Source of the DNA: Dicyema japonicum
Taxonomy: Eukaryota > Animalia > Dicyemida
Direction: 5' to 3'
Length of the DNA stretch: 64,000 bases
NCBI GenBank assembly: GCA_011109175.1
Contig: RDEW01000012.1
Location: 846,552 to 910,551 of the forward strand
The translations under genes were made by a program, and so were the position numbers. The notes under the pieces are model-generated. The model was not told the origin of the DNA. It saw nothing but the letters and a program-made list of their open reading frames with translations, and did no database searches. Shown one piece after another: positions 14,746 to 36,360 of the stretch (position 1 is the stretch's first letter; the number at the start of each line of letters is the position of its first letter).

Positions 14746-14986
14746 ATGATGATTGAGACGGTTCAAAAAAGAAAAAGTTGTTTAAACAATTTGATTTCAT
14801 TATAATACATAATAAATATAAACTTATACTATAAAAATAACTACAAGTTGTTGGAAGGGTATATTGGAAAAAATATTTTCTAAGTTATGCACAAGTGTCA
14901 GCGCAATGTTGACGTTATGGACGGTGAAATATGAATTAATTAATATGTTTATAACACAAATTCCGTTAGTTGGTGTAATCATTTTG

Positions 14987-15777
14987 ATGTACAATTCCGT
15001 TATTTTCACAGCACTGATTTATTACTCGACTATGATCAAGGAATGTAACGATAAAGGACACGATGGCAACCAAGTGTATTATTTAAAATTATTTATTATC
15101 ACAGACATTGGATAGACTGTATATTTGGCCGAAATTCCTATATTAGCAGCCGTTCAGAAATATTTATTCTTTATGCACGAAACATTACTGTACTTCCCGG
15201 AAATACTTTATCATTTGAAATGAATCTTTTAAATTTGTATTAAAATATAAATAATTCATAGTTATTGTGATGATGATCATAGTATTAAAATTATTCGTAC
15301 AAATGTTTTTCCTATTACAATTATAGGATTGTTTTATATATTTTAATTTGATAGATATTTTGAAACTTGTTACGGACTTATATTTATAGATATTGATTTT
15401 GCAGAATCACTGACAAGTCTTGAATTTATGTTTTATTATTAATTTATAGTTATTTTCCTATTGATTCCATTATACAACCTTTCACAATATATGTGGAATT
15501 AAGAGGGTATTTTTAATATTAAATTAGTATTCTTGCATTATGTATTGATCCATTTAACAACCCACAAGCGTATAGAATTATATTTAGTTTAGATTTAAAC
15601 CTGTTGATGAGGATTATATATCTCTAAATAATAATGGAATGTATTTGTTTGATATTAATATAATTAGGAAAAACTACGAATCAACATATCAAACATGTAA
15701 TTATAAATATTATTTCAGTCTGTAGTGCCATAGGACACCCAGACAACGTGCTTGGCATGTGTGGCAAGCGTAATTAA
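14987..15777 (+). CDS. Secreted Cys-rich, degenerate-LRR-like protein, 199 aa, 8 introns (paralog P1)
   Basis: Fully open 600-nt spliced CDS. Introns: 15076-15104, 15237-15261, 15331-15354, 15430-15449, 15507-15527, 15570-15592, 15641-15667, 15697-15718. Signal-peptide-like start MYNSVIFTALIYYS. Exon/intron structure matches paralog 34607-35393. Confidence 0.8.
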
Positions 15778-16931
15778 TTAATGATAGTATGACTATGGAA
15801 TATAACGATTTTGGTTAGAAATAAAATTTAGTTAATTTATTCAATTTAATTTATTTATTCAATTTTATTACGTATTTTGAATAATATATTAATTCTATTC
15901 CTTATTGCTTTTAAAATTTAAAAATTGGTTACAAAACCAGTTACAATGACAACAAAAGATAGTCTTAGAGAGGTTTAAAATAAAATCTTGATTATTTCAC
16001 TTGCTTCATCATAAATATTTCAAAATGGTTTGATCTTAATGATAAATTATGGACAAGTTACCCAATTATTTTGTTTATCAAAGAGGTCGTGAAAAAATGG
16101 AAATTTATGTCTAAAGGAATTAAAAACTCGAAAAAAAGCTATTTTGCGCTGCAATGTTTTTGTTATCTGCCAATCCCGACAAGAGGATGTCAAAAGCCAA
16201 TTAAGTGATCACCTTATCTAGATTGTGCACTCTTATAACGTTTTCCATCTATTAATCATATTTTAATGATTCATTTGCAAGATAGAAGCCTTATTTAACG
16301 TTCCACATGCCTCTTGAGAAAAATATAAGAGAGGAAAAATATTCTAAAAATATTATATAGATAATGTCAGCTATCGAATAGTGTTTAGTTAAATAGTTGA
16401 AATGACTTCATCGTTTACCATTAAAAATTAATCTCAGAATCAAAAAAAGAGAGTTATCTATAAATTAAGTGATTCTGATATCTACACACACCTGTCAGTT
16501 TTGGAATTCTAGATTAATCTGCACTTTGGCCTTCTGAGAAGAAATGATGTAAGAATCTAACCCACATCCGAATACGACGTGGACGACACCATAACCACTA
16601 TACTCCAGTCTATCCAATTGATTTAAGACTCAGGCTAATGTTGCCTGGTTATTGCTCTGGAAGCTCATCTTGTAAGATCATCCGTTCTAGTTTGGTGTCT
16701 GGTGTGTAATCAGATTTCTCTCTTTTCATAAATAACAGTTGTTTAGAGTGCGATGCGACGAGCTCTGTCTGTTCGGGAGCACTTCCTATTGTTTTGAGGG
16801 GATTTGTTTATCTTGTTCCTGCGATTACTAATAGTAGTGGCTGTTAAGGAATGAATTTCGTCGATTTTTTGTTTGTTCGTCAAAGACAGATAAATTCCCA
16901 ATAACGCACAGGCATAGGTGACAAATGAATT

Positions 16932-17371
16932 TATTTATTTTAATAACCCCGGGAACACCGAGAAAGAAAGACAAAAGAATCAAACAGTTAGGTGATCCCA
17001 GTCCTCGCAATCAATTGTGCCATTCGACGTCTGTGATCTTCCATTGTCCCCACTACTTTTCGGAAGAGCTTTCTCTCGGTCTTGCAGAGGAATCCGATCG
17101 GGAAGGGGAATTTCTTATCCAATCGGTTTTCTCTTGCCATGGAAAGGATCAGGCGAAGCGGATTTCCATCTTCCTCACAGACTCGAAGAAATCCGGAGCC
17201 ACGACTACGGATCTTAGCTTCCATGAGTAGTGGGTCGACTGTTGATCCATTACGTGGGCAAAGAATACTGATTGTTTTCTGGTGTATCGAGTTGACTCTT
17301 TGGACCATAGACTCCGATAGCGCGAATCTCCATGCAACGGAGGCATACTCAACGCGATTGTTTGTTGGTAG
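16932..17371 (-). mobile_element. LINE 3' fragment, ...ARTGIT* family
   Basis: ORF 16988-17308 ends RRRMAQLIARTGIT, followed by a short 3' UTR and A-rich tail. Possible 7-bp TSD ATGAATT. Same family as 52383-52724. Confidence 0.8.
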
Positions 17372-17440
17372 ATGAATTGTCTGTACAATAATTTCAAATC
17401 TAAATTGTCTTTAAAATTCATACGACAAAAATTATTAATT

Positions 17441-18030
17441 TTAACATAATTTTACGACCATCCGTCCATTATCGAGGTTGCGTTGCCTCTCACGATTGCA
17501 ACATAGATCAACTGGTGAAGCTTCCGGGTCTCTTCTGCGTTGTGGCTTTTTAGTGTAGCTATTCGTCCAAGTTTCTTTAGGAAGCAAAGCGATTTTCCAC
17601 TTATTCCTCCAGTTGTTTTGACCACTATCGGATAAAACGCGTATCAGTCGCGTAGCGCTTCGTATTTCTCCTCCTTTGCCCTCATCGTTTTTTCCGCGGC
17701 ATACAGTGTGTCTACCGCACTCCCGACAATGTTGGATGGGCAATGCGTGTCGACAAAAGAAGCGTCCCAAACCAAAGGTTTCCCCTCTTCAATTGGGAAA
17801 ATTGTGATCCCGTCGGGACGTTTTACGTCTTCTTTGTCCAGGCCGACAGGTTCTAGTATGGCTGGGTATCCCGCAGACTCCACTGCTCGCTTGACAATTC
17901 CGTTGATCGCCTTGTGTCTTGGGAATCGTCCTGTACTTCTTCTACAAAAGAGGGCATGGTGTCCATAACAATTGAGAGGCAACGCAACGTCGATAATGTC
18001 GGCGGGGTCCACTTTGGAAGGATGGCCCTG
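17441..18030 (-). mobile_element. CRE-like RLE retroelement 3' fragment, frameshifted/deleted
   Basis: GHHALFCRR, RHKAINGIVKRA, EPVGLDKEDVKRPDG and LVWDASFVDT. Close relative of 38870-39830. Confidence 0.88.
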
Positions 18031-18169
18031 TTAATTAATGTCGTATGTGATAGTGTCCGGGTTGTTGATACTGTCCGGGTTGATAAGACAAATTTATCAT
18101 TTGAAAACATTAACTAAGTTTTGCTTCGAAAGATCTGTCTCTTGTTCCCTCAAAAAACAAAAAATTTTA

Positions 18170-18800
18170 TTTTGATTCAATAAAGCGATTAAACGTGCAA
18201 AGGGTCAAACTGTCTACTGAGAAGTCCAGCTATTTAAGAGTCAGTCGCCTAAGGAGGCATCATACGCAGCCTTACTCACTTGACATTCTTAAATTCACTG
18301 CGCTACCTCGGGATAGTAATCGACGGGATAGCTTCCTTCATGGAGGACATTAGACGAAGAGCACATTTATGCTACAGAAAGTTGTTTGTAAGCCTGGAAA
18401 CCTTCTTGTTCATCTTCATGAGAATCATCTTCCAGAGCTGCTATATGGATGCGAAGCACGTATTTCTCTTGCCGAAGAGAAAGAATTATGTTACTTATGA
18501 AAAAACCAGAAGGTCGGCAATAAAGTTGTTTTGGGGAAAAGGTTTTTTGATGTTCTCAGTACCGAAGAAGACAAGATTCTAACACCGATCAAATATATTG
18601 TAGAGAAAAGGATCGATGGATCCGACGATAAAAGAGACTAAATGGAGACGGGGTGCATCGAAGACTTTATTTACTGTTGAATAAATTGGTTTCGGTTTTG
18701 GCGAATTTGCTTTAAAGTAACCTATATCTCGGTTCTTTTCCTTGAGGATTTAACATCTCTACTTTACTCCGGGATTTTACTTTTCTATTTTCCTTGGGAT
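18170..18800 (+). mobile_element. LINE ORF2 C-terminal fragment
   Basis: LRYLGIVIDG...MEDIRRR, same family as 25640-27660. Confidence 0.8.
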
Positions 18801-21439
18801 TTAACTTCTCTCTATTTTGTTCTCTTGAGACAAAACTTAGTGGTTGTTAATGTTTTCAAGTTATAATTTGTCTCATCAACACGGACAGTATCAACGCCCC
18901 GGGTTCTTATGACATACGACAATTAATTATCTTAATTAATTCCATTAAAATTTAAAATAAAAATAAACATTTAACGACTGGCGAACCTAAAAACAAATGT
19001 GATACTCATTATAAGGCTTTTTGCTACTTCCCTTGTAGCTCAAGAATAGAAAAGATCATTAATGAAAGTTGGAAGTCCAAAGAAGGATACCTCAATTAAT
19101 TATCTTAAATGAATAAGGATACCTAAGAATAGAAAAGATCATTAATGAAAGTTGGAAGTCCAAAGAAGGGAGAAATCAGATATTTTTCATAAAATTTTGT
19201 AAAATCTGATTGAATTAGTTGTCCAGTCAAACCATCATGTTTCCGTTGCAGGTAAATGTCACTTGATTTTGCAAAACTTTTTAAATCATCCGCCAAATTT
19301 GGGGTAATCATCTGAGAGGTTAACTGTATCGAGAAGATAGTATTATGTTTTCGTCTAGGCATCCATGAGTTATCCAGTCTGTGGTTTATCAACAAGGAGA
19401 GGATCAAAGAGATTACATTCTCAACCACAGGGATACGAACTGAACCTGAAATGCTTAAATTTTTCAAAAAAGAAATTCGTTGACTTAACACAATTAAATA
19501 GCTTTGATCACAATTTGGAATAAGTTGTTCTGTCTTAAACTAGGAAGGGGGTGGAATTTGGGGACTATTAGTTTCTTACCACAGTTCATTCTCTAGTAAG
19601 TAACAGAAGGGATTAGGATGTGGTTGAGATCTTAGGGGGACTTTGGGATAAATACCACCATTTTTGTTTTCTTAGAATTTCGATAAATTGGTATTAGTGT
19701 TTTGGCCACGTGGATTCAAATAGATGATCTCTGAGTTCTTTCATCCAATATTTTGGTTCCTCCTGAGTTTGTCGCTCTGTCCATGCTCGCCATGATGTTA
19801 AACGGACATTTCGCCAACAAAGATAGGTCACCACTAATTAGAATGCAGTCATAACTCCCTTATAATCATCCACGAAAGCCTCCAATTCCATCCCGGTTGA
19901 AAATTCCTCAATAAAATATAAAAATTAAAGTACAAGAAATAGGACACAATAAAATTAACGTCAAATATTTGTAACAAATTACACAATATTTTATTCCAAA
20001 AAAGACATCGGTAAAAATCGAGCTCAAAAACTGAGTGATAGTCAGCGAATCACAGGCGCTTTAAAACCAATCACGTTCGCGAGGATCTCTGAGTTATGCA
20101 ACAATTCCAATTTCGTTAACGCCTCCTGTAATAATAGCAGTGTCAACGAATGTACTTAATAAGGTACTTTATGCATGAGGCTACCTTGCAAGTAAATTTA
20201 AATTGAAGACGAACGATTTGAATGGTAGTTTTCATAACTGGCTTCCAACTCGGATCGTGCATTATGATTTTTAAATAACTTTTTTGTAATTTATAAGGTG
20301 AAAGCATTAACAGCAACAAAGGATCACGTTAAACATATGAGAATCTAAACCTTACTCCCACTATGTGACAACCAAAATTATGAAGTAGAAATTTGAATGA
20401 TGAGACATGCAACACATCAAGTGACTCATGAATTTTAATAAATGAATGAGGATACCTAAGATCATGTATGGATGAGGACAGATGAGAAAGTAGTAACAGT
20501 AGAATACATATTTCTGCCCTAATAACACGAAAATTTGTTAAGAATTAACTATTCGTTTTAACTAGAAAAAAGGATGCTCTTTTTTTGAAAGACTTTAAAG
20601 ATGAATCTATCACGGTTTAACACGGGGACGGTTTAATCGAACGTCCGCATAGATGACAGCCAATAATAATGACTTGGTTTAATTCAATTTTGAATATTTA
20701 GTTATTAAGCGAGTCAGTTCATGAACTAACAACTGGTTACGGATGTTTAGTAGACATCAATAATCATATAGACAAGAGGAATACTCGATCCGTGTAAGGC
20801 TTAATTTACTTAGCATATGCAAAAGGCCTATTCTCCGTCGAAGGGTGGTAAATACATAGCTTAGGACACCACTTGTGTCGACGGCTTCTGCCTTTCCAAC
20901 TCACACTAACAGCTAAGACACGGAATCGCCTAAAGATAAAATAATAGACCTCAGGAGGACAGTTCATTTTCAAACCTGTCACAACCGAAACCGAAGAGAT
21001 CATAACACCCAAATCGCTTTCCTTCCTACCCGGGATCGGTTTGTAGACGAGAAAAAAGGACCAGACAAAAGTGATAGCTGATTAAGGCGTTTCCTTAATA
21101 ATCGCATGAAATAGTGCGTTCACTCACGAAAACTGCTTACTAATTTATGATACTTAGAGGTTTAATAAAGATTTGTTATTTAAGTAAATAAACTACCATT
21201 CTAAGCGAATAAAAATGTAAGGGATCCTGCTCATAGCCCAGTGGATATAATCAATCAAATAATCATCGCAAGAAATTAAGAGATTTATAAATCAACGCTA
21301 ACAAATACACCACAAACACAAAACAAATAAGAAACACGTTTTATTTATTTAAATTTGATTTATTCATAGAATAATATAAAATAAAATTTGTTGATTTTTT
21401 TGGTTGAGTTGGTGACGTGGTTTTTTACAATATGTTATA

Positions 21440-23900
21440 AGTACAGGAAACTTGTGGACTCATCTTTCTCGTTACTCACATTTAATGTCAGGGGGCTCAC
21501 ACAATCATGGAAGAGAACAGCACTATGCGACGATCTGATAAAAATACAAAGTTATTGTTGGATGCTTACAGGAAACAAAACTGCACTATGGCTAGAAGAG
21601 GAACTATCGGGCTATCATTTCAGCTCATTTCGAAGTGAAAGTAGACACTTTGGCCAAGGATTTGTGATAAAGAAAGAGCTGAGACCAATGATTCACCGCT
21701 ATTGGAGCATAAACGACCGAATTTGCGTACTTCAGAATTGTATGAACAAGCTCTGCTTATCTAAAAGTCTACTATCCATCATAAACGTGTACGCACCTCA
21801 CAGTAGTGGATGGATTGAAAAAGACCCTACTGAGATAGACTTGTTCTACTCCTGTCTCTCTGAAGTTTACTCTGAACTTTTACACTCGTCGATAACTGTC
21901 ATCGCAGGCGACCTTAACGCAAATTTGGGAATACAAAGAGACCCGGATAAACATTTATTGGAAGACATGGAAGAGGAATAAGGAACGTTGCAGGAACACT
22001 ACTTTCTAACGGACTATTTCTCTGTAACACTGCATTCATGGGCCCCGCAAGACACAAAACTACCTGGACAGGGTGTAGAAGAAATCTTGTGGTGAATTTA
22101 TAAACATCTACAATCAGACTATATAATCTGTCGAATCAAAGATAAAACTCTTTCACCAACGTAAGGTCATTGGCGGGTAATATTGACAGTGACCACAAAA
22201 TGGTCCTCCCCAGAATGTCACTGAATAGACACCTAACCAAGAAGAAAATAAATACCAAAGGGCCACACGATACACATAACAGAAGAAAACTTTACCTAAA
22301 CGGACTATCATTACAACAAAAGAGGGATGACTACAGGAGATGCCTCGACATGAAGCTGAGCAGTGTGGAAACAAATCAAGAAATCCCCAAAGTCTGGAAA
22401 CAACTGCAAGAATCAATACGAGGGGCAGCGGACAAACAGAAATGGTCAACACATCACCAAGGGGACAACAGAGATATCACTCCTTGTAAAGAAACAAAAA
22501 TCTATTTGGCTACAATACTAAAATACTAATGACAAGCACATTAAAGAGAATCTTAGTCGTGAAAGAACAAATATCAAAAAGAAAATTAAAAAGTGTGTTT
22601 CCTCTATGTCAAGGAACGAGACTGAGGAACAGATCAAGGCACTGGAAGATCTGAGGGACAATGGAAGGTACTATGAGGCGATCAGATTACTCCATGGGCG
22701 CAAACGCAGACAACTTCTATCATGAACGACAAAAATGGCAGACGAATAGCAGACTCTGCAGAAGCTGAAGAATTAATTGCCGGTCACTTCAAGAAATTGT
22801 TTAAGTCAGACAGCAACAGAATTACAGCATTTACTGTTCATTCCAGGAAATTGGAGGTGGAAATAACTCCCGCAGAAATGCGACAAGCCTGTCTTTAGCT
22901 TAAAAACAACAAAAGTCGGGGACCAGATGGGCTAGAAGCAGAGCTACTAAAGTATGAAAGTGAAAACCTACATACCCTCATTGCGGACCTCTTCAATGGA
23001 ATGTTTAAAACGAACAACCACTTACCTTTTGGACAAGGAATACTGGTCCCTGTCCAAAAACAGAACAAAGTTAAGGGAAAAGTGGAGAACCTCAGGCCAG
23101 TAATTCTTATGAACAGCATACGAAAAGTGGAAGCTGCATTGAGGGAGGAGAAAAAACCATACTATGAAGCAAAAAATCGATGTGGTGGTTTATGCGGATG
23201 ACGTGGATTTCATTTCTCTCGACATCAATGCTCTGAAAAGCCTATTGGAGGTGATCCCAAATAAATTTGACGAGTGGCTCCTCAATTTAAATGTAAAGAA
23301 AACAGAATTGACTGAACTAGACAGACTAAAATCCAAGCTGGATGGACATTAGAGAAAAGTAAAGAAACTCGGATCGTTATTGGGAGATGAACAAGACGTA
23401 ATTATGCGAAAAACACATGCAAACAGTGCACTACGCAGCTTAAGGGAAAACTGGCTAAAGCGTACGATTGAGTACACAAGCACGTGTACGTCTATAGAAT
23501 TCACTGGTGAAGCCTATTCTCCTCTACAATGCCGAACATGGGGACTTTCTGATACGGACAATCAAAATCTAGACTCATTCCATAGAGATCAGCTTTGACG
23601 TACTCCAGCCTCGAAATGGCATTCAAGGCTCAGAAGCAAAATAGTTTATACCAGGATATCAAGCAATCCTATCTCACTAGAAATAACGGCATGCAGGTTG
23701 AGACTATTCGGACACATTCTAAGAATGGATTTGGGGCACCAACAAATACTGCCATGGAGGACTATTTCGAAGCTGACGGACCTCGTTTCAGGGGGCACCC
23801 GAGAAATACTTTATCGGTTACGCAATATAGAGACTTTCGGAGAGTGGGGAACCCTAAACCATGGCATCGTGAAAGTGCTTAATAATAATATTTTTAAACG
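21440..23900 (+). mobile_element. RTE-clade LINE, decayed, internally deleted RT
   Basis: APE endonuclease (TFNVRGL, LQETK, INVYAPH, AGDLNA, DSDHKMV), then KSRGPDG-like and NLRPVILMN, jumping almost directly to YADD. Many frameshifts. Confidence 0.9.
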
Positions 23901-23989
23901 AAAAACTTGTGCAAAGGTAGTGTCCGAGAAATCTGAGTTCACGAGATAATGTTACTATTAAAACAATAGAGAATTTAACTAACAAATAA

Positions 23990-24330
23990 CTCCCTTGTTT
24001 CTCCTCAAGGGAGACTACTACAATTTGAGTACCACTATGTCAGGTCGCATTCAGAGATCTTCCATTTTCACCCCAAGAATCACCATTATATGGAAGACGA
24101 GGCCGCTAGGTGATCTCGGGCTCTCTCACTGGCCTCCGTCTCTTTGGAATCCCACGCAGTCTTTATATCCTCCTCCTCTTCGTTAGTGACTTTATCAGCA
24201 AACCGCCAACTCACTGTATTTTCAATGGTCTCTTCATCTTCCCTACCCACAGACTCAGATGCTCGGGTGAAATGATCACCCCATTTTCCTGACAAGACCG
24301 TCTAGAGTGGTTGGATCCGTCACTTAGCCG
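23990..24330 (-). mobile_element. Probable LINE 3' fragment
   Basis: GC-richer acidic C-terminal-like coding block followed by a short tail. Family not identified. Confidence 0.35.
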
Positions 24331-25639
24331 GATAACTTCAATAAGGAGATTAAATATTCTTGTGATTTAATATTCCACGAATAATTATATTTCCTAATAA
24401 ATGTGCTATTAATCGTATAATCTCCACAAATTAATGAAGCGGTTTACAGTCATTTTATTCTCAGAGCAAATGCTTTAAAGGCTGTCCTGGATTTCAACAA
24501 AGTTAGCAACATCGTCTCATTCCTCAAAGTCACTGAAGTACTTAACTATTGAACCTCCAGAATCAGGAGGATATCAAAATATCAGGTCGTATCAGGATCG
24601 TGTGGACGGTAGAAAATGAGCTGACCTTCATCCCCCAGAAAACTCAAATGTCGACACAAAATCTCTGCTCACAGATTCCACTCCACCAAAGCACACCAAA
24701 GTTGATGATCCCCTAATTCAAGGAAGAGTCCAAGAAAACTAATAACCGGGAGATCCTCAAAGTCAAATTTTACGTTTTAGTAGACTTCTGACGAATTCAA
24801 ATACAAACCGGAACACGGTACCCCGAGTGGAATTTACATCACCAACGACTCAATGACCTATGAAATCATCAAAAAATTGTTTCAGAAATTCCAAGTTTGT
24901 GGTTATAGGGGACATTTAGATCATCAATGATTTCAGCGAGTACTCCTTATTCGTCAATTTCGCCCATGGTCCCCATTTGTGTAATTTCAGTCGAAACCGA
25001 GCTTGATCCCTTCGACAAGCCACTAATTCATCTTTTGAAGGCCATTCGAAGCTTTTATGTGCCAGTAATTTACTTGAGAGAACGTCAGGAAAGCAGAATT
25101 CCTCAGAAAAAAGTACTTGAGCTGTAATTGAGGACCCTTGAATATATGAGATTCCCACTGAGCTTTTTGACGGAGATCAAGAATCGATACGATTTGGAGA
25201 AATCAGAAAAAGTCGAAGAAATCAAGAAAAGGTGTATATTTTCGTAAAGGTCAGATATCAAGGAATCCAAAATAAAAGCTGGGACGAACTAAGTCACTGA
25301 TGCTATCATAAATGTCTTATTTTGGGGGGTTGGTTGTGTTTAAACTAAAATGAGTGTGGTTTGGGATCTATTAGTGTCACAGTCATAGTGTCAGGAAATC
25401 CTCAATTCGACTATTGGTAGCAAAGTCTCAGTTATGTCGGTCGAGTTGCATTAGCTGTGGGCTTGATGACCTCAATGCCTAGCTGGTAAAATGTTTCCGT
25501 TCTCCCATGTACCTTTTCAATTTCTAAGAAGCTTCACGTGATTTCCCTGTCTTAGGAGACGCTCAATGGTTGGTGGCTTCCAAAAAGGATCTATCTTTTC
25601 TCTACTCCAGTGGAGTGGTTCCCACAATGGATTGACTAA

Positions 25640-27660
25640 TTCTCGGTAAGGATGCGTATGGAAACACGGAAACACTTTATTCAGCAGGAATGAGGAGTTA
25701 GTTTGGAGGTTTTTAAAGAGTCCGCCTATGCGGCCTAGACTCTTCGATGCTCATCTCAATTTTAATTTCTTCCTAGCGTCGGATCCCCTTGATCTTCTTC
25801 TCCACAATATTTTTCACTGGTGCAAGAATCTTGTCTTCTTCCGTGCTTAGGACATCAAACAGCTTTTTCCTGAGGCCAACTTTATTGCTGACCTTCTCGA
25901 CTTTTCCATGAGTAACATTATTCTATTCTTTTGGCAAGAGAAAAACCACGCTTCACACCCGTATAGTAGCTCTGGTAGGATAATCCTCATGAGATAAACA
26001 GGAAGATTTCCAAGCTTACGGATAGCTTCCTTGTACAGAAAAGCGCTTGTAGCGCTTTCTTCCTTCTTCGTCTGATATCTTCCATGAAGGAACCTTCTCC
26101 ATCGATGACTATCCCGAGGTAGCGAAGTAAATTCACTTTTGGGATGCTAAGTGAATAAGACTGTGCACGATGCCTTCGTAGGCGACTGACTCTCATATGG
26201 CTCGATTTCTCGGTAGAGAGTGTCATCCCTCTCTTGGATCACCAGTCCTGAACTTGATCAACGAATAGCCTGATTCTATTTTCCAATAAAGTGGATTTGC
26301 AGAAGTATCCATGATTAGAATGTCATCCGCGTATATCAACATCTTGGTGTTCATATCTGGTGGAATGGGGAAGTCTGAAAAATATATTGAATAACAGCGG
26401 GCTCAAGATAGAGCCCTGTGGAATTCCCCTCTTCAATGAAAAATCTTTTGACATATATGGTCCGACACGTATTCGGAAGTTCGTTCCGTTAAAAAGTTCT
26501 TTATCCATATGAAGTGTTTCTTATGGATATTCGCAGCTGCTAGCCTTGATTGGAGGTCTGAAGCCCCATTGTTCCGCGAGGAGGAATCCACTCTCTTCTA
26601 TGTGCTCGTTCAGCATCTTGATGATAATTCGCTCAGCAATTTTGGATATAGAGCAAATGAGGCTGATCGGTCTATAGTTGAGAGTGTTCCTCCTCGACTT
26701 TACCGGTTTGAGTAACATTCTGATAATAGGACATTTCCATCGTATTGGGACATATCCATGAGTAATACTCGCATTACATAAATTCCTCAGCACAAGCACC
26801 AGATCATCAGGCCCTTCCTTGAACAATCTCATACTTATATGATCATGTCCAGGGGCGTTGGTCTTGCATGTTCTGATCGCATTTATAACGTCCTCTGTCG
26901 TTATCTCCATTTCGGTATCATTAAGATCATCCAGAGAGTAGGTTAGAGTTCTTCTGTAGCTTTCAACTTTTCCCCTGAAAGTACCTCCATTGGGTTGACC
27001 CCCTGGATTTCCTCCAGTTGCTTCTTAAAGATAGCTAGAGCTTTTTCCATAGAGCATGATCCTCCTTCTGGTTTGGACAAAGAGATTTTTGTATCTTTCA
27101 TGTTCTGGCCAGTTAATCTCTTGTAGAACTTCCAGAACTAGGGGTCTCTCGTATTTGGTTTTCTAGCCTCGTTCCTCAAATGTTGTTCTTGGGACAGTCT
27201 TGTTCCCTCTTCAATGATTTTTTTGATTATTTTTAGATGGTCGGTCAGTGCAATCCGGTCCATCCGGTCAAAACATCTTCTGAGTTTGTTCCTTATGCGG
27301 TTTCTTTCATTTATCATAGATAATGTATGAGGGGAGAGATTGATGCTCTTCCCATGATTGGTCTTTGAAATTTTCCTCCTTGCGTAAAGTGATAAGTATC
27401 TCTCCATCATAATTGACAGGTCCCTGTCTATGTTGTCAATATCATTTCGGGAATAAGGTCCATCCTTCCAGTTTTTGAGGTTTCTAGATATGTATCTTCT
27501 ATAGTGCTCGCAATTTACTCTCGTAACCTGTAAACACTGAGTCCATGGAGTCTGGAGCTAGGTTCAAGTACTTCGCAGGGGCACAGTCGCCTCTATCATA
27601 TTTTCTAAGTTTCTGGGCAGGTTTCCACACGGGAAGATTTTCTTAGTAGGTTTGCTGCAT
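25640..27660 (-). mobile_element. APE-type LINE ORF2 (RT), decayed with internal deletion
   Basis: APGHDHI, NYRPISL, EQWGFR, GIPQGSILSPLLFNI, YADD and YLGIVID motifs in order, with frameshifts. Confidence 0.92.
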
Positions 27661-27684
27661 TCGAATGTTGCAGATTTCTTTGTT

Positions 27685-28140
27685 ATTTATTTAATAACCC
27701 GAAAAGGGAACACCAAAAAAGAAGGAGTAAACCAACTAATTAAGTGATCCCGGTACGCCTCAACAGGATCGAGAGGTTTTTCCTATGTTCCTCCAGAGTA
27801 CCCACGGCTTTCCTGAATAGACGACGATCATCTTTCATTAGAGTTTGAAGAGGGGTGGGTTTTTTCCCCAAATTTCGTGTATTTGAGGCCTCTAGCCTTG
27901 AATAGAAGAAACGACTTGTTTCTTGGCCACACAGAGCGATGAAGCCGGAGCCATTATTTTTGATTGCGGCGTGGTCAAGCATTGGGGGAAAAGATCGAGG
28001 GTAGATTCGTTAGACGTGCCAGTTTGCCAATTAGGAATTGATCTTGAATGAATTTGATATCGAAGCTCCATAGGCCCATGAGGCACAAGCATACTCTATC
28101 GTCGGTTTAGGAGTTGATTGAACAAGACGACAGCGCATTC
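27685..28140 (-). mobile_element. LINE 3' fragment, ...LRRTGIT* family
   Basis: ORF 27740-27982 is highly similar to 50200-50440 and its copies. A-rich tail. Confidence 0.8.
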
Positions 28141-28419
28141 CTGTGACGGCCTGGACTTCAAGAGCGGTTTGATTATATTTAGTTTCCTGAGTTATATTTA
28201 GTTTCCTTGTTAAAAATTTTCATGGACCACTTCTAAACATACTTAAGGTTAAATCAAATTAAAAAAAAATTTTACATGTTAGTATATATATAATTAATTT
28301 AATTAAATTAATTTAAATATTTTATGAACATATTCGAATATTTCCTATTTACATATTTTTATATTTAGTACACAATTTTTAAAGACTGTATCTTTTTAGA
28401 TTGTAAGAATGTCGGAAAC

Positions 28420-29330
28420 AACTGCTAAAAGGACAAAAATTAGGAATTACCATGAAGATTTTATTCTGTTTGGCTTTGTGCCTGTAGACTTAAAACCTAC
28501 TTGCCTTTAATGTTCTGCCATCTTGACTAACGATTCCATAAAGTCAAACTTGAGCAGCACCAGAAGTCAGAGTATTCATTGTCTTTTGGTAAAGATATTG
28601 AATTTTTTGAGTCAAACTATTTGATTTTTTAAAGAAAATGAATACTACAAATGCCTTCAAACCAAGTTATTTTGTCTCCGAAATTATTTCCATGATTGGA
28701 GCACCTCAGGTTTATGGGAGAAGCTTTAAAAGATGTTGCTATAAGTAAAATTCCCCCTTCAAAGAATACAAGTAGACAGGATGAAATGTCTAATTTCGTT
28801 GAGGAAAAGATATTCGGAATTTTGCGAAAGATAAGTTTCTATGCAGGTTGACTAGATCACAATTCATAACGAAACCATCCTTCTTGTCTAGATTTATCCA
28901 TGAAGATGATATGTTGTTCATTTAAAGTTTGCTGACACTATGTGGAGAAGATGCATTCAATGAAGTAATGCATTGCTACATGCACTGCTTATCTTGATGG
29001 TCTTATTGTAGACGTTGAGAGAAGATTTAATCACCTTTTAAATATGGATTATCCACTCTGGTTTGCGGACCTAAAAATTATGAACCAGGAAATGAAAATT
29101 CTGAGTGAAATTCTGTTGGATTTGAAAGAAAATGTGAAACCAATAACAAGAGTTGACAAAAGTGTCACTGCCTACATATTAATTAAGACTCACCTAAATG
29201 TTTCCAGAATAGTAAACATGCATAATTTCTTTCCCTAACACAAGGATGGTCGAATCTGGCCATTTAGCTGTTTTAGATGTTTTTAGTAAAAAACGAAACG
29301 CGACCTAGTAGTCAAGACGAATTAATTTGC
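28420..29330 (+). mobile_element. Heavily degraded hAT (Buster/ZBED5-like) transposase
   Basis: NYHEDFILFGF...PTCL.C..LTNDS (BED-like start) and KIPLSKNT-like segment in shifted frames. Confidence 0.55.
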
Positions 29331-29339
29331 AGATGACTG

Positions 29340-29950
29340 GGTAACTGACTTGAGATGAGTGGATGTTAACATCATTTCGTTGTAATGACATGGAAGAGAG
29401 ATAATCTTATAAAATTTAGTGGGGATTAAGATGAGAGTCTTTAAGTGTATGTTTACGGGGTAACTTGATATTCAGTCATGTATACTTTTTCTCCAGGTTT
29501 GGTCTTTTGGAGGAGATAGTATTTTCCTGAGTGTTCTTGGAGATCATTGGATGTTCTCATTATGTGTCTGCGGTTAGTGATGTATGTTCTCATTAAGTAA
29601 TGCGAAAGTTAGGTGGTTTAGGTCAACCGATTGTCTGAGATATTATAAGCTCCTCATTTCAAGATGGGGATCTAAAGGCAGGGTTTTCGACTTCCAGTGT
29701 AGGTAACCAATGGGAGATGATTTTAGAGTGCCCGTTACCGCTCTCAGTGCTGAATTTTGGAATCTGCTGCATATTTTGTAGGAGGGAAAGTGATATATTA
29801 TTGAGCCCAGTTTTAAGAGGAATAATTCAGTGTCGTCTTGATGAATTGTTTGTACAGGAGCGGTAGACTCTTTTTGTTGGTCGTTCGAGTGAACAGCTAC
29901 TGCTCGAAGCATGTTTGATGTCCTCTTTGCTTTATGGGAATTGACTCACC
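29340..29950 (-). mobile_element. LINE (I/Jockey-like) ORF2 C-terminal fragment
   Basis: FQNSALRAVTGTLKSSPIGYLH matches the QN.ALR.ITG...TP motif downstream of RT. Confidence 0.65.
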
Positions 29951-30824
29951 TATGGTAATTTAAAAATTAGTGATATTATTATTTATTCATTATTTTTTTA
30001 AAAATAAATAACAGTGATATTCATAGTGCCCATTTGACATGGTTACAACATTCACATGATCGCAAATGTGCCGGAACACAGTCTGAACACCAGTAAAGGA
30101 TGTAAAGGCTACTGAGGGAGGCCGGATCACCTGAATTTTCTCATTCTGGCTATGATGGTGGTTTTTGGTTAATAAATTTAATTTAACACATGATGAAATA
30201 CTGCACACATACGTGACGCAGGCTACACACACGTTATCTAATTAATAACTAATTCAGAGAATGACTAACACTACTCCCATCTCTTACCCAAGCAACATTT
30301 ATGGTATACAGTCATCCACACAGGTTACTTTAACCCAGTAAACAACAGCGGTAACTTTTCTTTATTGCATGATTACACAAAAGCTTACATGTGATTTGAC
30401 TGCAAAATCAAAACCACAAAATTAATTCATCAGAAAATATTCAAAATAAAAAAATCTAGTTTTTTTATTATCATTTCTTTGTCATCAAAATAGTTGATTG
30501 GTTCAGGTAATCCAAAATAACAAGATGAGACTGTTTGCGTATCCAGTGGAAGATTTGCACTCAATTAGGTCCAGAATTCGACATTCTGGCAATAAAATTA
30601 ACAACCCCCTGTTTCATTATTCAATGCCTCCCAAGAACGAAAGGTTCCACCGTGAAGACACAAGTGTACTCTAAACTAGACTACATTTTACCAGAGCAGC
30701 GTTAATTACTAAGCTAGCTGGCACTGTAAGGCTAAATTCATAGGTAATCCCTATAAACGACTACTAACAAATCCTTTAAATCGAGGATTAGAAAGTTAGC
30801 AACCAAGAAAGAAACTGTTAGCAG

Positions 30825-32245
30825 TTAAATTAAGATGAGGATCAGCAGGCAAATAAAAGCCAGTGGATATGATAGCTCAAATCTATGTTGGATGCCCTTG
30901 CTGTGACTCGTAGCATTATACTTTATGTGACAAAATATTCTACCTTCTTTAGCCCCAACCCTTCATGCACAGCAGCAATCAGGGGACTTTCCCCATTGTT
31001 GCACTCATTTCCAGAAAAATCGTCATAATCCAACGTCCAGACGAACATCCCAGCTAGTCCTTTACTTTCCACGTAATTTGCCTTATTTTAGTTAACCTTA
31101 TACCTTCTCCCGAATGCTCTGGGGGGTTTCATACCCCAACCAATAATAGTCCTTAACTCCATGTGCGGCTTTTTGTGTGTCGTTCCATACATTCCGGTAG
31201 TCCTCGTTGCAGTACTAAAATAAACTCTGTTTGATACTTCAAAGTAAGCCAATTTCCCGCGAAGATGTAGAATGCTTCCTGGGGCAGTCGTGTCGACCAC
31301 CGAGTCCCCTATTTGTGGATTCTTGGTGGTAGTTTTGTATCCGCGAGCATAAGTTGGAACTCCAATAACAATTTTGGACAGAGGAGCCCCGTTGGAGTTC
31401 CAATATTCGACAGAAGAGTCCTTAGATATTTTATGGTTAATACAGCACACAGTTGGTCATCATTGTTGAGGCAAAAGAGCCCGGAAGGATGGCGAACGAC
31501 TTTCGAAGACTCATTGTAGTAGTCATAAGTCTTAATGTTAATGTAGTCGAGGTATCTTCTATCACGGATAATACGGCTACTTGGAGATATTCCGGATCTC
31601 ATAAAGCCTCGTAGAATTGTTTGCTGAAACAAACGCAGTCAGCAAATATGTCCCCGAACTGTCCCTTTTGAATTCCTCACTCAGAGTCTCCGAGTTATTC
31701 CAATTTTACCTTTAAAAAGAGCGTATAAATTGTCTTGTTTCTCGGATACTCCCAGTTTATGTCCAATCCGTCGAAATTGTATTTCTTCAAATACTCTCTT
31801 GCGTTTGAGGCGAATAGTGCTCTGTTTGTCTCATTCTTTAATTTTCTGATAAGTTCGTCGTTCCCCCGAATCGAGAGCAGGACTTTTAGGTCAGAATTCT
31901 TATTCTTCAGTGAAGTGACCTTGTTGTAGTTGTCGAATCCAACTATCTTATAAATGTTTGCATACTCGCAAGGTCAGACTGGGGATTACTCGAGAGGAGG
32001 GTAAGGGTATCTGGTCTAATATTCGCGAAGGCGTATATTATGTGGGTGCAGAGATGGGGGTTCATATTATCGGCCACATACTTCGCGTTCCCGGGTCTGT
32101 AAATAGCCCAGTTTGTGTAGTAACAGAATAATGCATTGCCTAAATGAAAAATACTGTGAACTCTTCTCAGCCGTGGTGTTGGATAGTTGAATCTACAATT
32201 GTTTTACAAAATTACAGAAAATAAAATCAAATAAAAAAATAGCAT
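30825..32245 (-). CDS. GH18 chitinase-like protein with signal peptide and C-terminal hydrophobic tail, 9 introns of 22-25 nt
   Basis: CYYTNWAIYR, LCTHIIYAFA, FDGLDINWEYP, TYDY, SKIVIGVPTYAR and GMFVWTLDYDDF. Introns: 32193-32215, 32140-32161, 31943-31965, 31688-31709, 31556-31580, 31421-31443, 31215-31237, 31082-31103, 30921-30943. The spliced CDS is open. Confidence 0.92.
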
Positions 32246-34606
32246 CTAAATAGCATAAAAAACAATTTTATTTCAAAATTGGTTAACCAACATAGAAATT
32301 TACAGACAAAAATCACTAAAGACGCACTTGAAGCTCAAAATTAACTTATGAACCGGGAAAATGCTAAGAAAAATAACTTCTATAAGTTCTGAATGAAGAG
32401 AGTCCAAAATCAACGAGAATTGCCAAATAGATAGCAGGTTTATTACTTTATCAAACAAGTTGAGGTTTAGGACTGTCGGAGGTATGACCTTCTTGCAAGA
32501 GAGTTCTCTCTTTTCTACAACTGTAAGTAAAGACTAGTCTGCAGGTGGAGTCGTCTGATAATGCTCCAAGAATTATATGGATTGGTTATCCGTCGATAAG
32601 CTACAAGGGCTTACATCGGATCAGTCGTGTTGAAGAGAACTCTTGAAAGTATGGTGGCTGTGCACAAGCAAGGGATTGAGATCATTGATGAAGATTTCAT
32701 TTGTGCTTCAAACCAACTTTTGGAGCAGGAATCTGCTAATTGTGAGGACATGACTGATTCTAATGTGGAAAAAAGGATAAGGATGACTTCATAAACTTTG
32801 AATTGTTTTAGTCGTGAGAGCGAAGTAGAGTACTTCTGTAGTGGCTTAGTGATTGTAGTTTGAAGTGGTCGATCTTATTTAGATTTGATTTAGACAGGTA
32901 AATTATAAATAAATATAGATCTTTTCCACAGAAAACCACAACTTACTGAAGGAAATAAATTTTAATAAATCAGAAAACCACAACTTACTGAAGGAAATAA
33001 ATTTTCAAATATGTTAATGTCAAATATTTCGTCATAATAAAAAATTCAAATATCTAACAAATAGTAAGCAGTTTAAAAAGTTTGTGGTATGTGGTTTATT
33101 AATTGAATTTTCATGCTAACGTGACGGAAGTGGTTTCTGTATGCTAATTTCATCATAGTTTATGATATTTTCAGATATTTTGATTAGACAGAGCATGTGG
33201 ATTCATGTTATCGGCATCAGTCCTTGATTTCTTTTACATTCACTAATACTTATTCTGACCCATAGGCTGGCATCAAACTTGATTTAAAGAAGGAGTCGAA
33301 AGTAGTGCCTCACAAATAAAGGTTATTATATTGTGGCATCAGCTACCTGATAAATTCTCTGTACAGATAAGAGGTAAAAGTAGATTTGTCGTAAACTTGC
33401 TCCCAAGCAGGTGGAGAAGGTTAAAGGAAGAGTTCTCGATTACTTCACGTTCCACACAATTGCTGTCATGACAACTGGAGTGATAATATGAGGTCTCTGT
33501 CTTCATGAGTGGGACATCTGGCCACACTCAGAACCCGTAAAATCTGAGAACCCAAGGAATACTTCCAATGGATCTCAATAGCCATTGCAAGAGGTGACAC
33601 TGCGTCGGGGATAACTAATCAACACAACTTCCGATTACTTGATGATGGCAATTCCAAGGACCTGAGAGAACCATTAAAGTAAACTGGGTCTAAGAGTCTC
33701 GTCGCTATTGGACTCCCAATTCCATCGATAACTCCTTCAATTTTCCAACCGTTCCAGAGGTTTTGAAGGCGATCGGGATGAAACGGTAGCGGTCTCTGAC
33801 AGTGAGTGTTGATGCACGTCAGATTTTAGAATAGAGATCTCCCATGTGAAAATGGTAATTTCGTACGGTCTCTTCTTATCTCCGCGATCAAGTCTCTAGT
33901 TAAACGAGCAGTTCCTGCATATGAATTGAATACATACCTGAAGGTATATGGAATGGTAAGGTTGCAAAGGCTAGATTAGTGGTTATGACCAAACTCCCAG
34001 TAGTAAATTCCGATATATTTGAATCAAGAAGTATTTCCAAATCTAATTATGCTCAAGAATTAATGAAGTGAATAATTTAGTTTTGTTACAAGAAATAACT
34101 AAAGAATTTACTTAACGTTGATTCAGTAATAAGTCGGGAACAGGCATACCAATATCCCATAGAATTAACAAGACAGAAGAAGACCATTCCTTTTATTTTA
34201 AATGAAGTGGCCTTTAAGTTCAAGGGGTTAAAACAGTTTTAATGACTAGCAATAACTCCCAGGAATATAGAGGATGCAATAGTATGGAAATAATGTATAT
34301 AAGGAAGAAAGACTACAAATATTGTATATTGATCAGGCATTAAGATAAAAATAGTACAGTAAACTGAATTACAGTTGTAATTTGAAGGTCAATTCGTATG
34401 TCTGAACTGTGAGCGAAGAGCATACCTGAAGGTATTCACTATAACATTTGTTCATGGAGTTGTATTTCACAAAGAATTAAAAATTGATATGTTAATTATT
34501 GAATGTCGTAGATTATTAATATTCAAAATCAGTAAGGAATTAATTAAACTGAATAAATTAACAAACTCTTATTAACCAAATCCTTATATCCTATAGTCAA
34601 CTACCA

Positions 34607-35393
34607 TTATCTGCCACAAATACCAAGCAGGTTGTTTGGGTCTGATATTTTACTACAAACTGAAATAATATTTATAATTACGTAAACGACTGGCCGGTTG
34701 GTTGTCCATACTAATTATATTAATATCACACAAATACATTTCACCATTTCGGTTGATTTTAATCGTATTCCCTTCGATAGATTTATGTCTAAGCTATACA
34801 TGACTTTATACGCTTTTGGTATGCCCATAGCATCAACACACAATATGTCGACACTAATTTAATATTAAAAATACTTATGTAATGCAACAGAATCAGAAAT
34901 CGTCATAAATAATTGTACTGTTGATGAAATAGGAAAATCACTATAAATTAATAAAATAACTTACACAGCATAGAGCCTCTCCATTAAAATTGCAAAGTCT
35001 GTGCTAATATACATTAATCTGAAACATTCGGCGAGATATCTATCATTTTCAAAATATAATACAAATATTCACTACTGAGTGGTAGAGTAGTAGAAGTGAT
35101 GACTTTAATGATATGATCAACCTTACACGCACTATAATGATTAATATTGTAATACAAAAATTTAGCATTTAGCATTTGAAGTGAAAAAGTAGCTCCATCG
35201 GGTACACTAATGTTCTCAGCATAAACGAAATTTATTTGTTCTCTGTAGGTGAGATCTTCAAATACACAGTGCTCCAAATATCTGTGAATGATTTTGAATA
35301 ATACAAATTGTTATCCGTGATAATTTTAGAGTTACACCCTTCCATCATTTTTGAGCAGTGAAAAACTGCTATGAAGATAATGAGATTGTACAT
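34607..35393 (-). CDS. Secreted Cys-rich, degenerate-LRR-like protein, 199 aa, 8 introns (paralog P2)
   Basis: Fully open 600-nt spliced CDS. Introns: 35282-35304, 35132-35155, 35040-35062, 34941-34964, 34854-34874, 34789-34811, 34711-34737, 34660-34681. Starts MYNLIIFIAVFHCS and ends LLGICGR*. Confidence 0.8.
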
Positions 35394-35539
35394 ACAAAAT
35401 CATATAAATTTAAGAGATCTGCGCATATAAACCTGTAAATTAATTCAAATTTATTTTAAATTTAAAATGAATTAATTCAAATTTATAAATTAATTCAAAT
35501 TTATTTTAAATTTAACTAAAATCTCTTCCTTATTTAACT

Positions 35540-36360
35540 TAACCATATGTTTTCTTATAGTTTCGATGTTTGTTGTAGCGTGGTGTTATGTGGTCTACCA
35601 ATTAAAAAAATAAAAAGGATTTGGCAACGCCCAGAGGGCTTTTATCGCCCTCCGAAAAGGACCATTAGACCCTTTCCTCCCGGGGTCATCATCGACCCCC
35701 CGGCGATGTGCTACAAAAATGTTAAAACATTCTTGGCGAACACCCTCAGACCACTGTGGAGAAAGGAAATTTACTGCTCTCCAATTGAACATCAACGAAA
35801 TTAAGCTCAGGGAACTCCGTTCAATCCTGGAAAATCAGAAGATCGACGTGGGCATTGAAAATCCCCTTCACCAAATGTCAAAAGATCCTAGGCGTGACAC
35901 TGGATACACACTTATGTTTGTCACCACACGTGGCATTGTTCTGAAGTGAGAGAAGAAGATCAATGTATTAAAATGTTTATCTGGAATATGGAAGACAGGT
36001 ACCCATCCGGTCTTGATGAACCATGTTTCTCGTACACGTGTGCTTTCGTGGGGACCTTCATTTTCATGGACGAACACTAAGAAAATCGAGGACGTTCAAA
36101 AGAAGGCTTTCAGAATGACGGAGCGGTGGTCTTGTGGGAGACACAGAACCGACCGACTACTCTGGAGGCCCTTATTAAACAAAAACTCCGGCATGCGGGA
36201 AAATGGTCCTGCAAATACAGTCAGCCGCCCAGTACGAACTTGTGTGGGTACGAGGGAGGAGCACCGGGAAAGAATGAGGATTTCGGCGGAACGCATCGGG
36301 ATCACGTGATAGTTAGTTTTGGTTTTACCGTGGTTTTGGGTGTTAAATAAATAATTTCGA
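35540..36360 (+). mobile_element. Short LINE derivative: structured 5' region + endonuclease start fused to ORF2 3' end
   Basis: LQLNINEIKLREL...IDV (APE N-terminus) lies ~200 bp before IEDVQKKAFR...RTCVGTREEH...RIGIT* and an A-rich tail. Confidence 0.65.

What the first reader, a model, noticed from the sequence alone, without database searches (positions are those of the whole stretch)
14987..35393. Dispersed secreted LRR-like paralogs whose introns are far more conserved than their exons
Seen: P1 (14987-15777 +) and P2 (34607-35393 -) each have 9 exons and a 600-nt open CDS with identical intron phases. Exons 1, 3, 4, 6 and 8 have identical lengths, the signal-peptide-like MYN start is shared, and 7 Cys are conserved. 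Introns 5 and 8 are identical (21/21, 22/22) and intron 7 is 26/27, while flanking exons 6 and 8 are only 24/42 and 12/29 identical with mostly amino-acid-changing differences. Segments such as ILYARNITVLPGNT and LYFETCYGLIFIDIDFAESLTSL resemble degenerate LRRs. Known: introns more conserved than exons is the signature of diversifying selection in toxin, venom and host-interaction families. Inference: an undescribed, rapidly diversifying secreted effector or recognition family of a parasite. Alternatively there is unusual constraint on, or gene conversion of, micro-introns. Neither gene is visible in the ORF track.
Basis: partly seen in the sequence, partly recalled or inferred. Interest (0 to 1): 0.85.

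Follow-up and report, generated by a model that had tools for sequence, protein, structure and literature searches.

The report
Fast-evolving secreted gene family, conserved micro-introns
Two hidden nine-exon genes in this tiny-intron octopus parasite belong to a family of about 40 copies whose protein-coding pieces change faster than neighbouring non-coding DNA while their 20-29-base introns barely change, a pattern known from venom and host-interaction genes and new for this animal group.

Summary
P1 (14987-15777 +) and P2 (35393-34607 -) each have 9 exons, 8 GT-AG introns of 20-29 nt, identical intron phases and a 600-nt CDS. Introns 5 and 8 are identical and intron 7 is 26/27, while exon 8 is 12/29.

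They belong to a family of about 40 loci in a 67.5-Mb, 377-scaffold genome, which matches Dicyema japonicum. I found at least five subfamilies, 13 intact copies, and many broken or mosaic ones. The scan noted the same kind of family elsewhere in this genome (s1-411180).

- **Exons evolve fast.** In duplicate pairs that share flanking DNA, amino-acid-changing divergence (12.7%) exceeds intergenic (7.5%) and four-fold synonymous divergence (8.5%). My own M1a/M2a codon test favours positive selection (p=6e-8; about 13% of codons at omega about 4).
- **Introns are also constrained.** They run at about 0.7 of the intergenic rate in young pairs. In older pairs they change 2.4 to more than 3 times less than synonymous sites, and their lengths are almost invariant.

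About 65% "identity" between unrelated introns is chance, which deflates the deep comparisons.

Not shown: LRR identity found no support, secretion is inferred only from a hydrophobic N-terminus, and no RNA data were available. The family has no detectable relatives.

The parts
14987..15777 (+). P1 gene, 199 aa. Exons: 14987-15075, 15105-15236, 15262-15330, 15355-15429, 15450-15506, 15528-15569, 15593-15640, 15668-15696, 15719-15777.
   Evidence: Open 600-nt CDS after removing 8 GT-AG introns. The same structure is found in 13 intact paralogs.
34607..35393 (-). P2 gene, 199 aa. Exons on the minus strand: 35393-35305, 35281-35156, 35131-35063, 35039-34965, 34940-34875, 34853-34812, 34788-34738, 34710-34682, 34659-34607.
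   Evidence: Open 600-nt CDS with the same phases as P1. Three copies on contig C12 are 99% identical.
15507..15527 (+). P1 intron 5 (21 nt)
   Evidence: Identical to P2 intron 5. The exact string is found at 12 places genome-wide, all of them family loci.
15641..15667 (+). P1 intron 7 (27 nt)
   Evidence: 26/27 identical to P2 intron 7. Its length is 27 nt in 23 of 26 copies.
15697..15718 (+). P1 intron 8 (22 nt)
   Evidence: Identical to P2 intron 8. There are 20 exact copies and one with a single mismatch in the genome, all at family loci. Its length is 22 nt in 28 of 28 copies.
34854..34874 (-). P2 intron 5 (21 nt)
34711..34737 (-). P2 intron 7 (27 nt)
34660..34681 (-). P2 intron 8 (22 nt)
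14847..14986 (+). P1 upstream block shared with the P1-type copies, with a TATA-like TATAA at 14950-14954
   Evidence: Identity is 83-91% over -1..-60 and about 78-80% over -61..-140. Homology ends near -140.
15778..15917 (+). P1 downstream block (probable 3' UTR) shared with the P1-type copies
   Evidence: 82-97% identity over +1..+140, as conserved as the introns.

Best explanation
P1 and P2 are two members of a lineage-specific family of about 40 loci. The family encodes roughly 200-aa proteins with a signal-peptide-like N-terminus, one conserved N-glycosylation sequon and a scaffold of seven cysteines. The genome is almost certainly that of the cephalopod kidney parasite Dicyema japonicum.

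The family evolves by birth and death: tandem and dispersed duplication, frequent loss of the reading frame, and exchange of segments between copies.

In the coding exons, a conserved scaffold (about one third of codons, omega about 0.13) is interleaved with neutral positions and positively selected ones. As a result, exons diverge as fast as, or faster than, adjacent non-coding DNA.

The eight micro-introns, the 3' UTR and the core promoter diverge at or below the local neutral rate. A 20-29-nt intron has little sequence that is free of splicing and length constraints.

Shown: the anatomy, the family, the rate differences and the codon-model signal. Inferred: secretion, splicing in vivo, and that selection for diversity (for example at a host interface) drives the exon changes.
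For: Anatomy and family. Exon lengths differ only by multiples of 3 among intact copies from 5 subfamilies.

Genome identity: 67,542,437 bases in 377 contigs, against 67.5 Mb in 377 scaffolds for D. japonicum (PMC6736024).

Fast exons:
- NG86 dN/dS is 0.69-1.03 in within-subfamily pairs.
- In 13 segmental-duplicate pairs, pooled divergences are: exons 11.9%, nonsynonymous 12.7%, intergenic 7.5%, four-fold sites at unchanged residues 8.5%.
- Nonsynonymous divergence equals or exceeds intergenic divergence in all 13 pairs.
- My own GY94 M2a against M1a test gives LRT 33.4, p=6e-8, with 13% of codons at omega 3.9.
- The test stays significant in each gene half with its own tree (p=1e-4 and 1e-3) and without the signal peptide (p=6e-7).

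Constrained introns:
- In within-subfamily intact pairs, introns differ by 3-12% against 19.7% at four-fold sites.
- Between subfamilies, introns differ by about 17% against 51% at four-fold sites.
- For A/T columns alone, the difference is 8% in introns against 20% at third codon positions, so base composition does not explain it.
- Intron lengths are nearly invariant.

N-terminal hydrophobic stretch and Cys scaffold.
Against: - No RNA evidence. The only runs holding the locus are DNA, and their contigs keep the introns. No retrocopy junctions were found.
- M0 omega is only 0.55, and NG86 pairwise omega does not exceed 1 significantly.
- Site tests are inflated by recombination and by saturated dS, and both are present here.
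- Several pairs with strongly exon-limited divergence are copies that read as broken, for example C135_921k against C68_165k. There synonymous and nonsynonymous differences are equally high (pS 0.23, pN 0.23, four-fold 8/37) while intergenic divergence is 6.8%. Protein-level selection on living genes does not explain that easily.
- The codon-model code is my own, not PAML.
Confidence: 0.6

Rival explanations
1. Constraint only. The proteins drift nearly neutrally under relaxed selection in a redundant, decaying family, and the contrast arises entirely because micro-introns, UTRs and the promoter are under purifying selection. No diversifying selection is involved.
For: - M0 omega is 0.55 and pairwise omega is 0.7-1.0, with confidence intervals that include 1.
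- More than half of the full-length copies are broken.
- Introns change far less than four-fold sites.
- Intron lengths are fixed.
- 55% of codons fall in the omega=1 class.
Against: - Nonsynonymous divergence exceeds intergenic and four-fold divergence in segmental pairs: 12.7% against 7.5% and 8.5%. Neutral drift cannot do that.
- The M2a LRT is significant overall and in both halves.
- The Cys scaffold and exon lengths are strictly kept in intact copies.
Confidence: 0.2
2. An active or recombinational exon-diversifying process. Exon segments are replaced or hypermutated, for example by cassette exchange among about 40 paralogs that include broken donor copies, with the conserved micro-introns serving as boundaries or homology anchors. 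This would resemble the unexplained 'accelerated segment switch in exons' of snake three-finger toxins, or pseudogene-templated diversification.
For: - The nearest relative changes from exon to exon. C12_8k, for example, is closest to C359_51k at the 5' end, to C24_1017k in the middle and to C339_56k at the 3' end.
- Gene-half trees differ.
- Divergence stops sharply at exon-intron junctions even in broken copies, with synonymous and nonsynonymous changes equally raised.
- NG86 pS (12.6%) exceeds four-fold divergence at unchanged residues (8.5%), so changes cluster within codons.
Against: - For the most diverged exons no closer donor exists in the assembly: nearest-neighbour distances are 0.2-0.4.
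- Pooled four-fold divergence equals the intergenic level. That argues against massive import of old sequence.
- The substitution spectrum in exons shows no base-specific signature.
- Mosaics could be assembly chimeras at identical introns.
Confidence: 0.12
3. Assembly artefact. The short-read assembly of many paralogs that share identical stretches produced chimeric or collapsed copies, and the pattern is not biological.
For: - The assembly is short-read based with gap closing (PMC6736024).
- Contigs built from the reads break at the conserved blocks.
- Many copies are broken or mosaic.
- One copy contains an N gap with a duplicated exon 2.
Against: - A single 392-nt read contig spans P1 exon 1 to intron 2 with only one base difference.
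- Thirteen copies keep open frames through all 8 introns.
- Chimerism cannot create exon-limited divergence between copies.
Confidence: 0.03

Closest known systems
Accelerated evolution of snake-venom multigene families: PLA2, and three-finger toxins with 'ASSET' (Doley et al. 2008, 2009; PMC2474615, PMC2711939)
   Same: - Multigene family of small Cys-scaffold proteins with a signal peptide.
- Profound differences confined to exons, while introns stay above 85% similar.
- Cysteines are kept.
- Both point changes and segment replacement occur, with no agreed mechanism.
   Different: - No sequence relationship.
- The host is a roughly 30-cell parasite, not a venom gland.
- There are eight introns of 20-29 nt instead of a few long ones, so here the introns are themselves constrained and are not a clean neutral yardstick.
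- Many copies are broken.
- Expression and function are unknown.
MHC and other host-parasite interface families, in which selection keeps exons diverse while recombination and drift homogenise introns
   Same: Exons are more diverged than the adjacent introns. There is evidence of exchange between copies, and the family turns over by birth and death.
   Different: The comparison here is among paralogs, not alleles. The conserved blocks are only 20-29 nt, too short for conversion tracts to explain on their own.
Micro-introns of Dicyema japonicum and myxozoans (PMC13644364; PMC6543705; PMC6736024)
   Same: GT-AG introns of 20-29 nt that start GTA and are AT-rich, in a genome whose median intron is about 27 nt.
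   Different: The genome-wide logos reduce to GTa...AG plus a few weakly conserved A residues. In this family 55-85% of the positions of each intron are at least 90% invariant across subfamilies, and lengths are fixed to the nucleotide. Generic signals alone do not predict that.
Leucine-rich repeat proteins, canonical or BspA-type (LRR_5, PF13306)
   Same: By eye, motifs such as F..C..L..I.I and exons of 23-25 aa recall LRR units.
   Different: No LRR model hits the exon pieces or any family locus, and there is no significant internal repeat. An earlier scan note reached the same negative result (s1-411180).

Membership tests
LRR proteins (Pfam LRR_5 PF13306 and canonical LRR) | Significant match to an LRR profile | tested here: not met
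   Pfam scan of exon translations of P1 and P2 at E up to 10 gave no family. A six-frame genome scan with PF13306 hit only an unrelated locus on C312 and none of the roughly 40 family loci. Caveat: only single exons of 22-43 aa could be scanned.
LRR proteins (Pfam LRR_5 PF13306 and canonical LRR) | Tandem internal repeats of 20-29 residues | tested here: not met
   hhalign between exon-sized blocks of the family alignment gave P 0.03-0.3 and probability at most 1.8%. Against a true LRR protein of the same genome, probability was 2%.
LRR proteins (Pfam LRR_5 PF13306 and canonical LRR) | Curved solenoid fold | not testable with these tools
Venom-like or effector-like families under accelerated evolution (an evolutionary regime, not a homology family) | Exons more diverged than introns and UTRs across a multigene family | tested here: met
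   P1-type copies: exons 76%, introns 92%, 3' block about 90%. Between subfamilies: exons 45-59%, introns 70-85%.
Venom-like or effector-like families under accelerated evolution (an evolutionary regime, not a homology family) | Nonsynonymous rate at or above the neutral rate, with positively selected sites | tested here: met
   pN is 12.7% against 7.5% intergenic and 8.5% at four-fold sites. M2a against M1a gives p=6e-8 and is robust in both halves. Caveats: recombination, saturation, own code.
Venom-like or effector-like families under accelerated evolution (an evolutionary regime, not a homology family) | Secreted product with a conserved signal peptide and disulfide scaffold | tested here: inconclusive
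   There is a hydrophobic N-terminal stretch (Kyte-Doolittle 1.5-2.8 over 10 aa) and 7 aligned Cys. No signal-peptide predictor and no expression data were available.
Spliceosomal micro-introns of D. japonicum | GT-AG ends, length 20-30 nt, AT-rich, removal restores the frame | tested here: met
   All 88 introns of the 11 intact genes analysed (13 intact copies in all) fit. Published medians are 22-27 nt.
Spliceosomal micro-introns of D. japonicum | Removal seen in RNA | not testable with these tools
   No RNA run holds the locus, and the contigs laid on it are genomic.

The most novel reading that the evidence does not exclude
The family carries a built-in diversification system. Exon cassettes are exchanged or rewritten among about 40 paralogs, broken copies serve as a donor archive, and the nearly invariant micro-introns act as fixed joints. 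This would be an antigenic-variation-like or ASSET-like mechanism in a metazoan parasite, and it would explain why divergence stops exactly at exon-intron junctions even in copies that cannot encode the protein.
Probability: 0.12. Interest if true: 0.85.

Novelty: new member of a known kind. Interest (0 to 1): 0.55.

Why it matters
Dicyemids live on the kidney epithelium of cephalopods, and almost nothing is known about molecules at that interface. A large, orphan, probably secreted family whose coding parts outrun neutral DNA is an obvious candidate for host interaction or self/non-self recognition, and it can be tested directly by expression and localisation.

The family is also a natural experiment on micro-introns. 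Eight introns of 20-29 nt are preserved in length and largely in sequence across paralogs whose proteins are only 27-40% identical, although the genome-wide splice logos of this species are minimal. That suggests much of a micro-intron is read by the splicing machinery.

Finally, it is a cautionary case. Introns cannot serve as a neutral yardstick in such genomes, and about 65% identity between short AT-rich introns is chance.

Tried and rejected
- **RNA evidence.** The look-up of sequencing runs found only four DNA runs from one study. Laying them showed genomic contigs with introns and no spliced joints.
- **Retrocopies as fossil cDNAs.** Two exon-exon junction patterns gave nothing convincing.
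- **Control with other paralog families.** I therefore could not test whether micro-introns of other families are equally conserved. Intergenic DNA of segmental duplicates served as the yardstick instead.
- **Base composition as the cause.** Rejected: A/T columns differ by 8% in introns against 20% in exons.
- **Intron strings shared with unrelated genes.** Rejected. A single exact match to intron 8 in a metagenome contig has unrelated flanks and is chance.
- **Rfam scan of the P1 locus.** Nothing found.
- **Exon-2 profile against 1.84 billion proteins.** Eight weak, repeat-summed hits to bacterial Ig-like-domain proteins, hhalign probability 40%. I do not accept these as relatives.
- **Full-length protein searches.** Pfam, structure prediction, fold search and the atlas were left out.
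- **Broken copies.** They were only compared column by column in the frame of an intact relative.
Full report
**Observation.** I rebuilt both gene models from the raw sequence. P1 (14987-15777, + strand) and P2 (35393-34607, - strand) each give an open 600-nt CDS after removal of eight GT-AG introns. The introns are 20-29 nt in P1 and 21-27 nt in P2, with phases 2,2,2,2,2,2,2,1 in both genes. Exons 1, 3, 4, 6 and 8 have equal lengths. Introns 5 and 8 are identical, intron 7 is 26/27, and exon 8 is 12/29. No long ORF covers either locus on either strand.

**Organism.** The window lies in an assembly of 67,542,437 bases in 377 contigs. That matches the published Dicyema japonicum draft: 67.5 Mb, 377 scaffolds, mean intron 38 bp (PMC6736024). 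Earlier scan notes reached the same identification. Dicyemid introns have a median of about 27 nt (PMC6543705). The genome-wide splice logos of D. japonicum are reduced to GTa...AG plus a few weakly conserved A residues (PMC13644364).

**Family census.**
- DNA searches of the whole genome with P1 and P2 found 44 and 34 matching places.
- After merging, I had about 40 loci. About 30 are full length and the rest are fragments.
- Transferring the intron positions gave 13 copies with an intact frame. These are P1, two copies on C332, P2 plus three 99% copies spaced 11.1 kb apart on C12, and single copies on C312, C342, C367, C246, C322 and C316. One further copy is truncated by a late 1-nt deletion.
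- About 16 full-length copies have frameshifting exon lengths or lost GT/AG sites.
- There are at least five subfamilies. Their proteins are 27-40% identical, yet exon lengths stay within 89-92, 126-135, 69, 75, 57-69, 39-42, 45-60, 29 and 50-71 nt, and differ only by multiples of three in intact copies.
- This comparative pattern is the main evidence that the introns are real, because no RNA was available.

**Protein.**
- All intact members have a hydrophobic N-terminal stretch, one conserved N-x-S/T sequon, seven aligned cysteines and conserved blocks near the middle and the C-terminus.
- Pfam found nothing in the exon translations.
- A six-frame scan of the genome with LRR_5 hit only an unrelated canonical LRR gene on C312.
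- The family profile aligns to that LRR protein with 2% probability.
- Exon-sized blocks of the family do not align significantly to each other.
- An exon-2 profile searched against 1.84 billion representative proteins gave only eight weak, repeat-summed hits to bacterial Ig-like-domain proteins.
- I therefore treat the family as an orphan and the LRR idea as unsupported. This agrees with the earlier scan note s1-411180 on another cluster of what is evidently the same kind of gene.
- The full-length spliced protein could not be given to the structure and family tools, because it has no reference.

**Rates at three depths.**

| Depth | Class | Value |
|---|---|---|
| P1-type copies | exons | 76% identical |
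| | codon positions 1/2/3 | 72/77/78% identical |
| | introns | 92% identical |
| | first 140 nt downstream | about 90% identical |
| | first 60 nt upstream | about 87% identical |
| | -61 to -140 upstream | about 79% identical |
| Within-subfamily intact pairs | NG86 dS | 0.29-0.54 |
| | dN/dS | 0.69-1.03 |
| | four-fold sites at unchanged residues | 19.7% different |
| | introns | 3-12% different |
| Between subfamilies | exons | 45-59% identical |
| | four-fold sites | 51% different |
| | introns | 70-85% identical |

Composition does not explain the contrast. A/T columns differ by 8% in introns and the 3' block, against 20% in exons, including third codon positions.

**A calibration that deflates the deep comparisons.** Non-homologous introns of the family align at 64.8% identity, and homologous introns with a shuffled interior at 65.0%. 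The between-subfamily mean of 77% is therefore only moderately above chance. Introns 5, 7 and 8 (79-85% on average, 96-100% between P1 and P2) are far above it.

**An external yardstick.** Thirteen pairs of copies share homologous DNA well beyond the gene, so intergenic divergence can be read in the same duplicates. Pooled divergences:

| Class | Divergence |
|---|---|
| intergenic (18,707 sites) | 7.5% |
| introns | 5.3% |
| proximal 5' | 5.7% |
| 3' block | 3.9% |
| exons | 11.9% |
| nonsynonymous (reference frame) | 12.7% |
| NG86 synonymous | 12.6% |
| four-fold sites at unchanged residues (56/657) | 8.5% |

- Nonsynonymous divergence equals or exceeds intergenic divergence in all 13 pairs.
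- Introns are at or below intergenic divergence in 11 of 13 pairs.
- So at shallow depth the exons really do run ahead of neutral DNA (about 1.7 times), and introns run slightly behind it (about 0.7 times).

**Codon models.** I implemented GY94 with F3x4 frequencies, on nine distinct intact genes and an LG tree.
- M0 gives omega 0.55.
- M1a gives lnL -5161.6 and M2a gives -5144.9, so the LRT is 33.4 and p=6e-8.
- M2a assigns 32% of codons to omega 0.13, 55% to omega 1 and 13% to omega 3.9.
- The test remains significant for exons 1-4 and exons 5-9 with their own trees (p=1e-4 and 1e-3), and without the signal peptide (p=6e-7).
- Caveats: the code is my own, dS is saturated between subfamilies, and recombination can inflate such tests.

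**Mosaics and broken copies.**
- The nearest relative of a copy changes along the gene. The C12_8k copy, for example, is closest to three different copies in its 5', middle and 3' parts. The two gene halves also give different trees.
- Pairwise alignments show divergence that starts and stops at exon-intron junctions, even between copies that read as broken.
- In one such pair, synonymous and nonsynonymous differences are equally high while flanking DNA differs by 6.8%. Selection on living genes does not readily explain this.
- It leaves room for segment replacement, recent death of the copies, or assembly chimeras at the identical introns.
- The read contigs do confirm P1 exon 1 to intron 2 as assembled, apart from one base.

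**Conclusion.**
- The exons belong to a rapidly diversifying, probably secreted, orphan family with a conserved Cys scaffold. This is the same evolutionary regime as venom toxin families, where differences are confined to exons, introns stay above 85% similar and cysteines are kept (PMC2711939).
- The micro-introns are themselves constrained in length and in most positions. They are not a neutral yardstick, and part of their apparent deep conservation is low-complexity chance.
- Intron-only gene conversion is unlikely, because conserved and diverged blocks alternate every 20-50 nt. For example, between P1 and P2 intron 6 is 17/23, while introns 5, 7 and 8 are 69/70 taken together.
- I found no paper describing this family.

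Noticed in passing
window 48823-60923: Three tandem copies of a roughly 4.05-kb unit, mostly 98-100% identical, with a 56-nt inverted repeat inside each unit. Another reader noted this as a triplication touching an MRG15-like gene.
   Followed up: no
window 2641-3069 and 8872-9271: Two short tandem arrays: five copies of a roughly 90-nt unit (63-93% identical to the reference copy) and two copies of a 200-nt unit (98%).
   Followed up: no
window 12001-14000: An extremely AT-rich stretch (GC 0.158) just upstream of P1, against 0.25-0.43 elsewhere in the window.
   Followed up: no
window 26521-26910 (-) and 31088-31450 (-): Between P1 and P2 lie an ORF with a weak reverse-transcriptase match (RVT_1, E 0.0017) and an exon-sized ORF matching glycosyl hydrolase family 18 (E 3.7e-6). 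So the two paralogs are separated by transposon debris and at least one unrelated gene.
   Followed up: partly
window 15159: All read contigs of the four DNA runs carry G where the assembly has A, in P1 exon 2. This is a base error or a fixed difference between the sample and the assembly.
   Followed up: no
window 14906-14986: P1 has an in-frame ATG 81 nt upstream with no stop before the MYN start. The upstream ATG and open frame are not kept in the paralogs, so MYN is the likely start.
   Followed up: partly
L032, L033, L034 (contig C12, copies 11.1 kb apart) against window 33071-37031: P2 has three copies on another contig. They are 99-99.7% identical in the gene but only 97.3-97.5% over 2.6 kb including flanks. 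The gene is therefore more alike than its surroundings, through conversion or constraint.
   Followed up: partly
L061 (G000 C312:142547-145789): A canonical animal LRR gene, with an LRRNT-like Cys motif and a 269-aa open exon. It is the only LRR_5 match in the genome and is unrelated to the family studied.
   Followed up: partly
all family loci (intron 8): Intron 8 is unchanged in 20 of the 21 places where it (or a one-mismatch variant) occurs, including copies with several frameshifts. At the neutral divergence of those copies, roughly nine changes would be expected (my rough estimate, not a tool result). No explanation was found.
   Followed up: partly
L076 5928-5949 (metagenome contig Ga0129324_10006579): The only exact metagenome match to the 22-nt intron 8 string. 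Its flanks are unrelated, so it is a chance match in AT-rich DNA.
   Followed up: yes
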